DNA from: Blastocystis sp. Blastoise | Lineage: Eukaryota; Protista; Bigyra: Opalinata | Length of the DNA: 64,000 bases | Assembly: GCA_039096225.1 (NCBI GenBank) | Contig: JBBPEB010000026.1 | Span: forward strand, 841,357-905,356 | Reading direction: 5' to 3' | In this document: piece after piece, positions 39,237 through 47,882 of the stretch | Layout of the letters: each line of letters begins with the position of its first letter | How positions within the stretch are numbered: the stretch's first letter is position 1 | Notes under the pieces: generated by a model | Database searches by the model: none | Seen by the model: only the letters and a program-made list of their open reading frames with translations | Told to the model about the DNA's origin: nothing | Made by a program: the position numbers and the translations under genes

Positions 39237-39328
39237 ATGGTGAAAGAGAAGGTAGAATTTGATGCGAATAAGATGGTTGATATTCAGAAGGATGTAATTC
39301 ATTTTGAAAGACTGATTGGTGATTTAAT
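39237..39328 (+). pseudogene. Orphaned 5' end of the TLDc gene (MVKEKVEFDANKMVDIQKDVIHFERLIGDL), cut by the Pack-CACTA insertion
   Basis: Joining 39328 to 46403 (removing the element and one AAT) reads ...GAT TTA ATT GGT ATT TTA AGC AAG..., in frame with the 46452 ORF. Confidence 0.85.
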
Positions 39329-40423
39329 CACTATGAGGCAGGGTGGCCTATTTAAGAGTTTTGATTGGTTAATTTTAAAAATAGTCCAATAATTTTTCTT
39401 TAAAAAATTGACCTTCTAAAAAAGTGGTTTAGAGAAGGAATTTTTCTGAAAAACAAAAAAAAATAATTCTAAGTCGCTATTATTTTTCTATTTTTCTATA
39501 TTCTTCTCATATAGAGTTAATATGAGGTTTTTGACATTATATTCAATCAATAGGGTCTTTATTTGACAAACAGAGCTGCTTTTTATGTTTGTTTTCTTAA
39601 CATTAGTGGTTTGGAAATGTTGACTTATTTTCAATAAAAAATTGCTAAACGGTGTTCAATAGACCATGTAGACTCATAATATAAATGAAAAAACTTGTTT
39701 TATGATGTTTATAAAAAAAGTCAAAAACAAAAATTCAGACAGTCAAATTTTGTAATACACGGTAATTTTTTTCATTTCAAAAGAAAAAGAAAAATTTGAA
39801 AGTGGGTCTTTTGTTTTCTTTTTTTGTTGAACTTGATGTATGAATATGTATTTTGTTTTAATATATCATTTTTTATTTAGTGAGGATGTTCGTGTTTCAA
39901 ATTTGTTGTATTTTATATATTTTATTTTAGTTAATTCATTTCTTATTTTAGGTATCAGGTCTTTTAAAGATGAGACAACTCTGTCCATCGTGAAATTGGG
40001 TTCTGTGTTTTCCTAGGTGGTTCAACTGGATCAAAAATACTTTCTGTATATAATTATATTTTTTAATTAGCATTATTTATTTAATCTATCTTTATTTTAT
40101 AGTATAGAATGATTGCTGGTGATCAAAAGTGTTTATTTATTTATTATCTGTCAGTCTAGTAAGTATTTATATTAATTAGATTGTAATTACTTATTTTTTC
40201 TATTATATATATTTTTTAAATTTATTTTTTTATTAATTTATTATATTAATCGCTATCTTATTATTTCTACATTTTTAAATATAATTTTTATTCTATTTTT
40301 ACGATAATAAATTATATATATATAGACATACGAGTTAATACTTTCATTGAGTGAAGAACTTGTTTATCTTTTAATTTATTTTTTGTAGTGTTTATTATAT
40401 ATCAAAATATAGATGAGTATATA

Positions 40424-40683
40424 TATTATTATTATTATTATTATTATTATTATTATTATTATTATTATTATTATTATTATTATTATTATTATTATTATTA
40501 TTATTATTATTATTATTATTATTATTATTATTATTATTATTATTATTATTATTATTATTATTATTATTATTATTATTACTATTATTATTATTATTATTAT
40601 TATTATTATTATTATTATTATTATCTGAGATATTATTATTATTATTATTATATTATTATTATTATTATTATTATTATTATTAT
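40424..40683. repeat. Intronic (TAT)n microsatellite
   Basis: Direct observation. Confidence 0.95.
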
Positions 40684-44206: not shown

Positions 44207-44531
44207 TATTATTATTATTATTATTATTATTATTATTATTATTATTATTATTATTATTATTATTATTATTATTATTATTATTATTATTATTATTATTATT
44301 ATTATTATTATTATTATTATTATTATTATTATTATTATTATTATTATTATTATTATTATTATTATTATTATTATTATTATTATTATTATTATTATTATTA
44401 TTATTATTATTATTATTATTATTATTATTATTATTATTATTATTATTATTATTATTATTATTATTATTATTATTATTATTATTATTATTATTATTATTAT
44501 TATTATTATTATTATTATTATTATTATTATT
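44207..44531. repeat. Intronic (TAT)n microsatellite, ~108 units
   Basis: Direct observation; ends just before a TATAG acceptor at 44540. Confidence 0.95.
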
Positions 44532-46402
44532 GTTATATAGGATAATGTACAGTGACTTAGATCTGTTAGATCAAATTATATATAAAGATTTAATAGATAT
44601 AAAGAATATTATATTGTAGAAGTATATATATATATATATATATATATATATATATATATATATATATATATATATATATATATATATATATTACTATTAT
44701 TATTATTATTATTTCCTATATATACTATCCATTAGTATTATATATGTTTTATAGGCTAATTTAATTGAATATACTTTATTTAATTACAATAACCTCTTTT
44801 AAAATATCTTCATTATATTATTTTTTATATGATTTATTATCTTCCTTCTAGTCTACTCTTTGTATTAATTTTAATATATCAAAAGAAATAACCTATTTAG
44901 AAATAATAAACTATAAAGTAACTACTCTTCTTTCTCTTCTATTACTACATATGTATTATGAATTCTACAAATATATATATATATATATATATATACTCTC
45001 CTTCCATTATAAATATTAGTCTTTATTTGAATCATTATGTGTTTTGTTCAAAACTGATTTGTATTAAACTGCATGATAAATAAATGTCATTATTAAATTA
45101 GCTAATAATTAATTTTGTGTTTTAATAGTATCTATTATTATTGATATATTTTTCACTATAACAATATAAATCATATTTATTATTTTACTAAATCATTCAT
45201 GCAAGTGTATTTTTACTCTAATAAATATAGAAGAATAAAATTAATTTATTTCAAAGAATGTACTAATTAGAAAAAAGTAATGCCACATAAATTATCTTAT
45301 TTGATAATTTGTTCTGTTCTTATCAATTATGTCATATTATTATATCAATAGAACCTATACATGAGGGCAATTATGACTTCATTCCTTGAAAATATTAAAA
45401 TCGTTATTTCGGTAGTCTCTACACGTTATTAATAAGAATAAATAAACGTATACAACTCATTTTAAACTCTATTAATAGACTTTTGTTTAACGAAGACTTT
45501 TTAGTATTAAAAAAAAGAAAAACAGACGTTTTCATCTATCTCCTGGATTTAAATCAAATTTTAATGAAATTTTTATATATAAATAAAAAGATTCTTTTTT
45601 ACCCCCACCCCTGTTTATTTTTTTATATTTTTCAATCTTTACATAAATATTTTTTCTATTTATATTTCAAAAATATATAATAAAGGTTCTATAAAATGTA
45701 TTTTTATTATTTTATACATATAATAGTATATAGGTTTCTTTATATCATCAAAATAATAAGTAAATGAATACGATTATGGATAAGGTATATATATATTTAT
45801 TCTATAATTAATTCTATAGGTTTATTATATTATTATCAACTCAAAATATCAAAAACACTAATATTGGAAAGGTATGTTTCTATTCATTTTTACTAATTAT
45901 ATTCTAGCATCTATAGGAAGACCAAGTATCTCAACCTTGACCCATTACAAAGCTTCTTATCAATGGTATTTACTTATATTCACCTTTTATTCTTTACATT
46001 CTTATCATTTCTTTATATATAGGTATTGAAACTTTCTGCGGTCTTATTAGAGTGTTAATAGCTGTATAGATTACTCCATTACAAACTTAAATTGTTCTTC
46101 TCTTCTTCTTTTTTTTCCTTGTCTTTTTTTCTCTTTTCTTTGTTCTTTCTTCTGTATATTAATGCTTGAAAAGTTATCCAATCGTTTTGTTTATTTTAAA
46201 TATGTTTTATTGGCTGATATAAAATAATATATAATTTTCATTGGGTCATTTTTAAAGACATTTTTTATATTCCCGTGAATTTATCAAATATATTAAGGTT
46301 TTTCCCCATGCTTATAATTAAGCTGAGAGGGTTCTGATTCAGTCTGATGACAAAACCTCTCTTTGTAGAGGTTTTGTAAAAAAAAACTGCCTCATAGTGA
46401 AT

Positions 46403-47882
46403 TGGTATTTTAAGCAAGTCAATAAGTTTTTGTATTCATTCAGGTGAGTCCGTGAATGAATTAGTGAATCGATTAACAAGAAATTGTGAAGGAATGAATG
46501 ATAAGAATGGTGATGATCCACATATAATTATCCAAGAATCTTCTTTTCTGAATGAAAATGATTTAAATATGAATAATAATGATAATGGAATTGATTATAT
46601 TCGATTCACTAATAAAGGTCCAGTTTATTCTCTTCCTAAAAGAGTAACAAATAGTCTAGTGGGTAGTCTTCTGTATGAATGTTCCCAAGAAAATCAAAGA
46701 ACTAATGACGGAAGTATTTATTTGGATTATCGTGGTGATGAAACACTTTTTCCTTTATTAATCGATTCTTTAATGAATAAGAAAATAAATATTGATAAAT
46801 TGAAATTTGGAGATCAAATTGATTTATTAAATCTATTTGAATATTGTTATTTACCTATTCCTGAAGAATTAATGAAAACCTATTATAGAAGAGATCATGG
46901 TGTGAAACAATATGAAGAAGATGATGATGTTGTTCTTTATATAAATGATAAGGAAGATGATAGATTAAAAAAATACTTAAAGAAGAATGGATTAATGAAT
47001 AAGATTGTTAATGAATATGGTTATGGATATGTAGATTATGATGAAAAGAATAATGAAATGTTTATGAAGATGAATTATACATATATTGATCATATTTATG
47101 AATATATTCAATATAATTGTATTTATATTTCTGAAGAAGAAACAAAGAATATTAATAAAGAATTATTAGAGAATGAAATGTGTAGATTATTTGGTGATAA
47201 AGTAATAAATATAGTGGATGAATGTATAATCCCTTATTCATATTTCCCCTATACACGTATACTTACTAATAAATCCATGGAAATACCCTTAATGAATTGG
47301 CTTGGTAAAGAAAAGAAATGGAAATTATTATTTAGGTATTTATTATTTTATTATATTATATCATTATATATATAGAGCAAGTGAACATGATTTTTTTGTA
47401 AGTGAATTTCATAAATATTGTGATAATAAAGGAGAAACAGTAACTATAATCAAACATATAGGTAATAATAATCATATTAATATATTTGGAGGATATGCAG
47501 ATCAAAGTTGGGAATCTAGAACAAGCAACTGTATATTTATTTTATATAATCATTCAATATAATTTATATAGGTTATAAATCTCATTCTAAAGAATTTCTA
47601 TTTACTTTAAGTAATGAACATGGTATTCCACCTACTAAATATGATAATATTAATAGTAGCTATGGTATATGTTGTTCTTCTTCTTATGGTCCAACATTTG
47701 GAGGTGTTCGTGATATCTATATATCTGATGAATGTCATAGTAATACTAAATCTTTTTGTAAAGCATCTTCTTATTCTGAAGTGAATACTCCTCAAAGACA
47801 TTCATTATTTGTAAATACAAATAACTCTAATTCTCAAAATAATTATTAAGTAGAAGATTATGAAGTCTGGGGAAGAGCATAA
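46403..47882 (+). pseudogene. Remainder of the BTB-like + TLDc domain gene (transposon-split, with a premature stop)
   Basis: BTB/T1-like DGSIYLDYRGD. TLDc motifs KKWKLLFRASEHDF..FHKYCDNKGETVTIIK..IFGGYA..W..EFLFTL..YGPTFGG..DIYISD. Introns at 47336-47375 and ~47531-47571. TAA at 47847-47849 precedes VEDYEVWGRA*. Confidence 0.88.

What the first reader, a model, noticed from the sequence alone, without database searches (positions are those of the whole stretch)
39237..46452. Pack-CACTA insertion confirmed by reconstruction: excision restores the TLDc reading frame
Seen: perfect 13-bp TIRs and an AAT TSD. Removing 39329-46402 gives MVKEKVEFDANKMVDIQKDVIHFERLIGDLIGILSKSISFCIHSGESVNELVNRLTRNCEGMNDK..., continuous with the 46452 ORF. 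So the whole 7 kb, including the AlaRS cargo, arrived as one unit. Ends and target are pristine while the cargo is decayed, which suggests (inference) that capture is older than this transposition.
Basis: seen in the sequence. Interest (0 to 1): 0.8.

Follow-up and report, generated by a model that had tools for sequence, protein, structure and literature searches.

The report
Gene-carrying CACTA transposon splitting a TLDc gene
A 7.07-kb non-autonomous CACTA-type "Pack" transposon carrying a decayed piece of the cell's second alanyl-tRNA synthetase gene sits in exon 1 of a subtelomeric TLDc gene in a tortoise-gut Blastocystis; the kind is well known from plants but has not been described in this protist.

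Summary
The element is window 39329-46399 (7,071 bp). It has perfect 13-bp CACTA inverted ends; the right arm is 46387-46399. An AAT duplication flanks it at 39326-28 and 46400-02.

- **Insertion:** Twelve uninterrupted paralogues of the host TLDc gene align without gaps across the reconstructed junction (88-97% identity). They encode the same N-terminus.
- **Family:** Seven other members have the same ends and their own 3-bp duplications. Two are 13-kb elements encoding an 822-aa protein. Profile search links that protein to Transposase_21/DUF4218 (CACTA) transposases.
- **Cargo:** About 3.8 kb is collinear, introns included, with an apparently intact second AlaRS gene on contig 16, probably organellar. 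The cargo lacks that gene's first exons and its last exon.
- **Shared history:** Three siblings carry the same cargo; the left junction was compared in one and the right in two. They share frame-breaking lesions with the window copy, so capture predates this insertion.
- **Junctions:** Both capture junctions lie in ATT-type microsatellites, which make up 4.7% of the donor gene. The element backbone has such an array at the left-arm junction. This suggests microsatellite-guided capture (inference).

No sequencing runs were listed, so reads were not tested. The kind is known; the host lineage is new. The scan's first-stage notes report other Pack-CACTA-like elements in this genome.

The parts
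39237..39328 (+). Host TLDc-family gene, 5' part of exon 1 (start codon through codon 30 plus two bases of codon 31)
   Evidence: the reading frame and protein are identical or nearly so to 12 uninterrupted paralogues.
39326..39328 (.). Target-site duplication, left copy (AAT)
   Evidence: The paralogues have a single GAT or AAT at this position.
39329..39341 (+). Left terminal inverted repeat, CACTATGAGGCAG
   Evidence: The same 13-mer ends 7 other family members.
39329..40492 (+). Left arm (family backbone). It is 83% identical to the first 1.26 kb of the 13-kb autonomous element and 88-97% identical to sibling left arms.
40425..40700 (.). (TAT)n microsatellite at the left arm/cargo junction (approximate limits)
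   Evidence: alignment. The donor intron has a (TTA)n array at the homologous point. The cargo-less backbone and the autonomous element have a TAT/TTA array at the end of the left arm.
40644..44394 (+). Cargo: an internal fragment, exons and introns, of the second AlaRS gene (donor at contig 16:1863576-1867287). It lacks the donor's first exons and its last exon, and it has decayed.
   Evidence: collinear, 83-97% identity per block; 91.8% over ungapped columns; three frameshifting indels in 10 sampled exons against none in the donor.
44205..44533 (.). (ATT)n microsatellite at the cargo/right arm junction (approximate start)
   Evidence: Homology to the donor ends inside the donor's last-intron (ATT)n array (L005 5595-5762).
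44534..46399 (+). Right arm (backbone of the non-autonomous subfamily). Only its last 79 bp match the 13-kb autonomous element.
   Evidence: (93% to the contig 10 right arm).
46350..46377 (.). Subterminal hairpin: an 11-bp perfect stem lying 9 bp inside the right inverted repeat
   Evidence: fold z-score only -2.0. Its function is not shown.
46387..46399 (-). Right terminal inverted repeat (reverse complement of the left one, 13/13)
46400..46402 (.). Target-site duplication, right copy (AAT)
46403..47335 (+). Host gene, remainder of exon 1
47376..47530 (+). Host gene exon 2 (TLDc domain, Pfam positions 36-78)
   Evidence: PF07534, 32.1 bits, above the 24.5-bit cut-off.
47572..47882 (+). Host gene exon 3 (TLDc positions 83-148). 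A premature TAA at 47847-47849 cuts off the last 10 codons.
   Evidence: (the closest paralogues read AAA there).

Best explanation
Window 39329-46399 is a non-autonomous DNA transposon of the CACTA/EnSpm (CMC) superfamily. The genome is Blastocystis sp. Rus-B ('Blastoise'), a tortoise-gut stramenopile. The element has three parts. The first is a 1.16-kb left arm shared with 13-kb transposase-encoding partners. The second is about 3.8 kb of captured host DNA. The third is a 1.9-kb right arm shared with other non-autonomous relatives. The captured DNA is an internal, intron-containing fragment of the genome's second AlaRS gene on contig 16, which is probably the organelle-targeted one. The fragment cannot encode a synthetase: it lacks the first and last exons and carries frameshifts. 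The composite element was formed once and then moved, because the same design sits at other loci. One transposition, catalysed in trans by the family's transposase, placed it in exon 1 (codon 31) of a subtelomeric TLDc paralogue and duplicated AAT. That gene copy is now a pseudogene: the reading frame stops 23 codons into the element, and a separate nonsense codon lies near the 3' end. Shown here: the ends, the duplication, the empty sites, the family, the donor, the shared lesions and the transposase homology. Inferred: mobilisation in trans, the organellar role of the donor, and how the capture happened. Capture most likely involved template switching or ectopic recombination between ATT-type microsatellites in the element and in two donor introns.
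For: - **Ends and duplication:**
- **Paralogous empty sites:** 12 loci, each a single HSP across the junction (gap-free in the closest), with an identical N-terminal protein.
- **Family size:** at least 13 left ends at 91-99% identity.
- **Duplications in relatives:** 3-bp duplications ata, aat, ggt, ctt, aat, tct and ata in seven other members with the same ends.
- **Autonomous partners:** contig 19:662533-675631 (13,099 bp) and contig 23:54707-68563 carry an 822-aa ORF. The profile built from this protein family finds distant proteins carrying PF02992 and PF13960. The related window ORF itself gives a sub-threshold DUF4218 match.
- **Donor gene:** collinear Pfam AlaRS matches along contig 16, no stops or frameshifts in 10 sampled exons, and a 26-residue basic leader before the domain.
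- **Cargo collinear with donor, introns included:**
- **Same cargo in siblings on contigs 3, 15 and 10:** the left-arm junction was compared in the contig 3 copy and the right junction in the contig 15 and contig 10 copies.
- **Shared lesions:** two 1-bp deletions are shared by the window and contig 10 copies. An insertion at the same exon site is shared by the window, contig 10 and contig 15 copies.
- **Cargo-less backbone:** 3-kb elements made of left arm plus right arm only.
- **Microsatellite junctions:** ATT-phase arrays are 4.7% of the donor gene, yet both cargo boundaries fall in two of its three arrays.
Against: - No sequencing run was listed for this DNA, so neither the junctions nor an empty allele could be checked in reads. 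The assembly is nanopore-based (PMC10690189), so single-base indels in the cargo could in principle be errors. However, they are shared between loci and absent from the donor.
- The 822-aa protein has no direct Pfam match. Its link to CACTA transposases rests on profile hits at E 1e-11 to 1e-7.
- No clear arrays of subterminal repeats were found.
- The empty sites are paralogous, not allelic.
- No identical source copy exists. The arms and the cargo have different nearest relatives, so recombination among copies blurs the history.
- In the five-sequence tree, the position of the contig 3 copy relative to the donor is unresolved (support 0.46).
Confidence: 0.9

Rival explanations
1. The capture happened by the route proposed for Arabidopsis Pack-CACTA. 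Two elements inserted close together around a copy of the AlaRS gene, and aberrant excisions removed the two inner ends. This left a hybrid element whose left and right ends came from different parents.
For: The left arm matches the autonomous element over 1.26 kb, whereas the right arm matches it only over the last 79 bp and belongs to a different non-autonomous lineage. That fits a hybrid origin. The model itself is documented in PMC6379663.
Against: No solo element ends remain at the donor locus. Cargo-less 3-kb elements already combine this left arm with this right arm, so the hybrid backbone existed without cargo. The model does not predict that both junctions fall in ATT-type arrays covering 4.7% of the donor.
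Confidence: 0.25
2. The four AlaRS-bearing elements arose from several independent captures of the same gene, not from one capture followed by transposition.
For: In the five-sequence tree the contig 3 copy is not clearly separated from the donor (support 0.46), and many site patterns conflict.
Against: The window and contig 3 copies have the same left arm/cargo junction text. The cargo of the window, contig 15 and contig 10 copies ends in the same donor (ATT)n array. All four copies share 20 gap runs and 129 substitutions relative to the donor. Frame-breaking lesions are shared between copies.
Confidence: 0.05
3. The element belongs to another superfamily that also makes 3-bp duplications (PIF/Harbinger, Zator), and the CACTA start of its ends is a coincidence.
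For: The partner's transposase has no direct Pfam hit. No subterminal repeat arrays were seen.
Against: The duplications do not follow the TWA pattern typical of PIF/Harbinger (established knowledge); they read aat, ata, ggt, ctt and tct. Seven of the ten profile hits scanned carry Transposase_21, and two of those also DUF4218. The 39%-identical window ORF gives DUF4218 at E 1.3e-4.
Confidence: 0.04
4. The 7 kb is an assembly artefact or a non-transposon insertion, such as a segmental duplication.
For: No reads could be examined. The region is subtelomeric and repeat-rich.
Against: The boundaries coincide to the base with 13-bp inverted ends and a 3-bp duplication, and with a clean paralogous empty site. 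Misassembly would not produce this.
Confidence: 0.02

Closest known systems
Pack-CACTA elements of Arabidopsis thaliana (Catoni et al. 2019, PMC6379663) and Pack-TYPE transposons of plants (PMC8903248)
   Same: These are non-autonomous elements with CACTA-type ends taken from an autonomous partner, and they make 3-bp duplications. Their interior is made of host gene fragments, exons and introns. Several family members share one cargo. They insert into genes.
   Different: The host here is a stramenopile gut protist, not a plant; PMC8903248 describes Pack-TYPE elements as found in plants. The arms are much longer (1.2 and 1.9 kb). The partner transposase is so divergent that Pfam misses it. Both capture junctions lie in ATT-type microsatellites. 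Mobility is inferred here from copies and empty sites, not observed in real time.
En/Spm (CACTA) and other CMC-superfamily autonomous transposons (Pfam Transposase_21 / DUF4218 proteins)
   Same: The ends begin with 5'-CACTA, the duplication is 3 bp, and the transposase is large (over 800 aa). Profile neighbours of that transposase carry Transposase_21 and DUF4218.
   Different: There is no direct Pfam match. No evident subterminal repeat arrays were found. A second TnpA-like gene was not examined. Word-based search of 5.8 billion proteins found homologues only in this Blastocystis strain.
Pack-MULEs of rice and maize
   Same: They capture gene fragments at the DNA level, the captured fragment is amplified, and the cargo is typically non-functional.
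   Different: Pack-MULEs belong to a different superfamily (Mutator), with 9-10-bp duplications and long inverted ends (established knowledge).

Membership tests
CACTA/EnSpm (CMC superfamily) DNA transposon | Terminal inverted repeats beginning 5'-CACTA | tested here: met
   13/13 perfect inverted ends, CACTATGAGGCAG. The same ends occur on 7 other members.
CACTA/EnSpm (CMC superfamily) DNA transposon | 3-bp target-site duplication | tested here: met
   AAT here. Other members have ata, aat, ggt, ctt, aat, tct and ata. A single copy is present at 12 paralogous empty sites.
CACTA/EnSpm (CMC superfamily) DNA transposon | An autonomous partner with the same ends encodes a Transposase_21/DUF4218-type transposase | tested here: met
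   Two 13-kb elements have identical ends and an 822-aa ORF. There is no direct Pfam hit. Profile-search hits at E 1e-11 to 1e-7 carry PF02992 and PF13960. The homology is remote, so the catalytic residues were not mapped.
CACTA/EnSpm (CMC superfamily) DNA transposon | Arrays of short subterminal repeats (binding sites for the second element-encoded protein) | tested here: inconclusive
   Only chance-level short repeats were found in the first and last 600 bp, plus one 11-bp hairpin near the right end.
Pack-TYPE (Pack-CACTA) transposon | Non-autonomous: no transposase inside | tested here: met
   No long ORF. Similarity to the autonomous element is limited to the left 1.27 kb and the last 79 bp.
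Pack-TYPE (Pack-CACTA) transposon | Interior derived from a host gene that exists elsewhere in the genome | tested here: met
   About 3.8 kb is collinear with the contig 16 AlaRS gene, introns included, at 83-97% identity per block. The donor has no element ends and no lesions in 10 sampled exons.
Pack-TYPE (Pack-CACTA) transposon | Moved after capture: the same cargo sits between the same ends at different loci | tested here: met
   The contig 15 copy (TSD ata), the contig 10 copy (TSD aat, different flanks) and the window copy carry the same cargo. The right junction was compared in these three, and they share lesions.
Pack-TYPE (Pack-CACTA) transposon | Observed mobilisation, excision footprints or an allelic empty site | not testable with these tools
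   No sequencing run was listed. Only paralogous empty sites are available.
Class II alanyl-tRNA synthetase (cargo and donor) | Pfam tRNA-synt_2c (PF01411) and tRNA_SAD (PF07973) matches in collinear order | tested here: met
   The donor has eight collinear matches, several above the cut-off. In the window cargo, single pieces are below the cut-off (17.8 and 19.8 bits), but the genome scan reports 32.9 bits with neighbours in frame, above the 30.3-bit cut-off. The cargo lacks model positions 1-138.
TLDc-domain protein (host gene) | Pfam TLD (PF07534) match | tested here: met
   Exon 2 scores 32.1 bits (cut-off 24.5). Exon 3 scores 21.6 bits and continues the same model.

The most novel reading that the evidence does not exclude
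Gene capture by this CACTA family is guided by trinucleotide microsatellites. An ATT/TAT array at the end of the element's left arm is present in the autonomous element, in the cargo-less backbone and in the Pack copies. This array pairs with ATT arrays in introns of host genes. Repair synthesis or recombination then copies the gene segment lying between two such arrays into the element. The extreme microsatellite load of tortoise Blastocystis genomes (about 12% low complexity) would then make Pack-element formation recurrent. That would fit the UTP20-bearing relatives found here and the other cargo-bearing CACTA elements reported in first-stage notes.
Probability: 0.4. Interest if true: 0.6.

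Novelty: new member of a known kind. Interest (0 to 1): 0.45.

Why it matters
Pack-type transposons shuffle and amplify pieces of host genes. They have been characterised almost only in plants, and how they pick up DNA is still debated. All the stages are preserved here in one small, contiguous protist genome:
- the autonomous partner;
- the cargo-less backbone;
- the apparently intact donor gene;
- four cargo-bearing copies with shared lesions;
- a base-exact paralogous empty site.

Both capture junctions fall in a class of microsatellite that covers under 5% of the donor gene. This makes the capture mechanism testable across the other cargo-bearing elements of this genome. The result also adds a divergent, Pfam-invisible clade of CACTA transposases. 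And it shows that transposons are actively remodelling the subtelomeric gene families of Blastocystis.

Tried and rejected
- **Reads:** The look-up of sequencing runs listed no run holding the left junction.
- **Pfam on the partner's 822-aa ORF and its upstream 151-aa ORF:** no match, even at E 10.
- **PF02992 scan of the genome:** it found only four weak hits at unrelated loci.
- **Main AlaRS gene (contig 19) as donor:** rejected. Similarity is at the protein level only.
- **Right arm as a UTP20-derived second capture:** rejected. Only low-complexity noise at about 59% identity was found.
- **tRNA-like or Rfam RNA inside the element:** none found.
- **Subterminal repeat arrays:** none convincing.
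- **Same ends on the window's other large element (about 14671-31302):** it does not share the 13-mer.
- **Ends of the 99.9%-identical UTP20-bearing repeat:** not reached, because the copies are longer than the 9 kb fetched.
- The analysis was redone from coordinates.
- **Telomere array (62478-64000):** it was only read.
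Full report
**Setting**

The window is the right end of contig 17 (841357-905356) of a 33.3-Mb, 34-contig assembly. Its GC content is about 20%. It ends in a TTAGGG telomere array from about 62478. That array was only read.

Protein hits name the organism as Blastocystis sp. 'Blastoise'. The genome paper equates this with strain Rus-B from a Russian tortoise: 33.3 Mb, 23% GC, nanopore plus Illumina, about 12% low-complexity DNA (PMC10690189). That paper reports transposable-element content only as a percentage. A full-text search found no description of CACTA elements in Blastocystis.

**The observation**

The 13-mer CACTATGAGGCAG occurs exactly twice in the window, even allowing two mismatches. 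It lies at 39329-39341 on the plus strand and 46387-46399 on the minus strand; about 0.13 matches are expected by chance. AAT flanks both ends, at 39326-28 and 46400-02. The element is therefore 39329-46399, 7,071 bp.

**The insertion is real**

The 429 bp upstream of the element has more than 15 close relatives, mostly near contig ends. I fetched twelve of them. I compared them with the window sequence after removing 39329-46402.
- Each aligns as one HSP spanning the junction, at 88-97% identity. The closest aligns 397/397 columns without a gap.
- At the junction every paralogue has a single GAT or AAT, where the window has AAT-element-AAT.
- The translated N-terminus is identical across the junction.

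These are paralogous, not allelic, empty sites, but they fix the insertion boundaries to the base.

The host gene carries a TLDc domain in exons 2 and 3 (PF07534). It also has a second lesion. A TAA at 47847-49, where the nearest paralogues read AAA, removes the last ten codons.

**The family**

The first 300 bp of the element has at least 13 full-length matches at 91-99% identity in the genome. The last 300 bp has three matches at 96% plus more diverged ones. Seven other members have the same 13-bp ends and their own matching 3-bp flanks:

| Member | Duplication | Note |
|---|---|---|
| contig 15:714887-721163 | ata | |
| contig 10:126137-161457 | aat | 35 kb, with nested material |
| contig 33:77824-87793 | ggt | |
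| contig 33:821103-829149 | ctt | |
| contig 23:138885-158269 | aat | carries a nested Helitron, |
| contig 19:662533-675631 | tct | 13 kb, 822-aa ORF |
| contig 23:54707-68563 | ata | 13 kb, 822-aa ORF |

The last two are 13-kb elements with an 822-aa ORF.

That protein has no Pfam match. A word-based search of 5.8 billion proteins found homologues only in this strain. A profile built from six family members found 105 proteins. Seven of the ten hits scanned carry Transposase_21, and two of those also DUF4218. The window's own 787-aa ORF (24746-27109, minus strand) is 39% identical to it and gives a sub-threshold DUF4218 match.

Together with the CACTA ends and the 3-bp duplications, this places the family in the CACTA/EnSpm (CMC) superfamily. 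No convincing subterminal repeat arrays were found.

**Anatomy of the element**

Against the 13,099-bp autonomous element, the window element shares only its first 1,269 bp (83%) and its last 79 bp (86%). It encodes no transposase. Its right arm (about 44534-46399) is shared with other non-autonomous members. Three-kb elements on contigs 26, 14 and 16 consist of left arm plus right arm only. They show what the backbone looks like without cargo.

**The cargo and its donor**

Pfam scans of the whole genome find a well-preserved AlaRS gene on contig 19. They also find a second AlaRS gene at contig 16:1862900-1866500, and weaker fragments inside the elements on contigs 15, 3, 10 and 17.

The window's interior (40644-44394) is collinear with the contig 16 gene, introns included. 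Identity is 83-97% per block and 91.8% over ungapped columns. To the contig 19 gene it has only protein-level similarity.

The contig 16 gene has these properties:
- many short introns;
- a 26-residue basic leader ahead of the catalytic domain;
- a neighbouring S17-like ribosomal protein gene;
- no element ends.

I infer that it is the organelle-targeted AlaRS and the donor.

The cargo starts in the donor intron that precedes the exon beginning at L005 2147, so Pfam positions 1-138 are missing. It ends in the donor's last intron, so the last exon is missing too.

**Decay and shared lesions**

I read ten donor exons column by column in a five-way alignment.

| Copy | Stop codons | Frameshifting indels |
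|---|---|---|
| Donor (contig 16) | 0 | 0 |
| Window | 0 | 3 |
| Contig 10 | 1 | 3 |
| Contig 15 | 4 | 3 |
| Contig 3 | 0 | 1 |

- Two 1-bp deletions are shared by the window and contig 10 copies.
- An insertion of 61-81 bp at the same exon site is shared by the window, contig 10 and contig 15 copies.
- A stop codon is shared by the contig 15 and contig 10 copies.

The window and contig 3 copies share the same left arm/cargo junction text. The cargo of the window, contig 15 and contig 10 copies ends in the same donor array.

Cargo identity to the window copy is 97.1% for contig 10, 94.8% for contig 15 and 92.7% for contig 3. The four element copies are 89-92% identical to the donor. A tree groups the window and contig 10 copies with support 0.99, but it leaves the contig 3 copy unresolved relative to the donor.

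Because these copies lie at different loci with different flanks and duplications, the lesions predate the transpositions that separated them.

One caveat is that the assembly is nanopore-based. However, lesions that are shared between loci and absent from the donor are unlikely to be assembly errors.

**What 'pristine ends' does and does not show**

Family members whose arms differ by 10-20% still have perfect 13-bp ends. The contig 3 copy has no right end in the assembly, and its left end has two mismatches. So end conservation reflects the requirement for mobility more than recency.

The arms and the cargo also have different nearest relatives:
- left arm: contig 3 96.8%, contig 10 87.6%;
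- cargo: contig 10 97.1%;
- right arm: contig 10 93.3%, contig 15 81.7%.

This indicates recombination among copies. No identical source copy exists, as expected for a cut-and-paste element.

**How the capture may have happened (inference)**

Both ends of the cargo coincide with ATT-phase trinucleotide arrays that exist at the homologous positions in the donor. These are L005 2083-2112, in the intron before the first captured exon, and L005 5595-5762, in the last intron. Such arrays cover 213 of 4,578 bp (4.7%) of the donor gene, in three blocks. Two random breakpoints would both fall in them with a probability of roughly 0.002.

The element's left arm ends in a TAT/TTA array in the Pack copies, in the cargo-less backbone and in the autonomous element. 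In a relative that carries a UTP20 fragment, homology to the UTP20 gene also ends at an intronic (ATT)n array.

I therefore favour template switching or ectopic recombination between microsatellites. The alternative is the paired-insertion/aberrant-excision route proposed for Arabidopsis (PMC6379663). Neither route was tested directly.

**Consequence for the host**

The element lies in the same orientation as the host gene. Translation from the host ATG would stop 23 codons into the left end, giving a 54-aa product. With at least 12 intact paralogues present, loss of this copy is probably neutral.

**Comparison with known systems**

This element meets the structural definition of a Pack-CACTA element: non-autonomous, CACTA ends, 3-bp duplication, genic interior, and copies at several loci. 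Such elements are described as a plant phenomenon (PMC8903248). Full-text searches for CACTA in Blastocystis and for CACTA gene capture in stramenopiles found no description of one. First-stage notes of this scan report other cargo-bearing CACTA elements elsewhere in this genome. I did not test those notes.

**Verdict**

This is a new member of a known kind in a new host lineage. Its unusually complete set of intermediates makes the capture mechanism testable.

Noticed in passing
L030 (contig 16:1140700-1149700), L033, L034; the true UTP20 gene at contig 34:675944-680429 (L035): A repeat longer than 9 kb is present in at least 17 copies; the three copies compared are 99.9% identical. It contains open fragments of the UTP20 N-terminal domain (PF07539). 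It also has regions 73-75% similar to the left and right arms of this CACTA family. The 8-10-kb members of the family share its internal 5.2 kb. Its true ends were not reached. It looks like a very recent burst of a second cargo-bearing element.
   Followed up: partly
window 24746-27109 (-): An uninterrupted 787-aa ORF is 39% identical to the 822-aa transposase of the 13-kb partners and gives a sub-threshold DUF4218 match. It belongs to a different CACTA lineage, and the surrounding element does not use the 13-mer ends.
   Followed up: partly
window 47847-47849: A nonsense codon (TAA where the nearest paralogues read AAA) truncates the last 10 codons of the interrupted TLDc gene. The 5' part of this gene is closest to the contig 19 paralogue (97%) and the 3' part to the contig 31 paralogue (95.5%). 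This suggests gene conversion among subtelomeric copies.
   Followed up: yes
L010 3186-7577 (-) (contig 23:141570-145961): A Helitron-like Rep plus Pif1-type helicase gene (ORFs of 1,027 and 421 aa, identified by eye from motifs and not scanned) is nested inside a 19.4-kb member of the family.
   Followed up: no
contig 10:126137-161457 (L003, L004): The closest cargo sibling is a 35-kb composite. It has the same ends and an AAT duplication. A 2.7-kb insertion lies inside the cargo, and about 26 kb of other material separates the cargo from the right arm.
   Followed up: no
window 46350-46377 and the right ends of L014, L016 and L030: An 11-bp perfect hairpin lies just inside the right end. Beside it, the short motif TTCAGTCTGAT is conserved near the right ends of family members that are otherwise only about 75% identical. 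It may be a transposase-binding or processing site. No tRNA or Rfam match was found.
   Followed up: partly
window 49347-49573 and 49670-50102: These stretches are 70-76% similar to parts of the 5.2-kb interior of the UTP20-bearing elements. They recur next to the TLDc paralogues at other contig ends, so the subtelomeric repeat unit may include an old element remnant.
   Followed up: no
window 62478-64000: A TTAGGG telomere array with occasional variant units forms the contig end.
   Followed up: no
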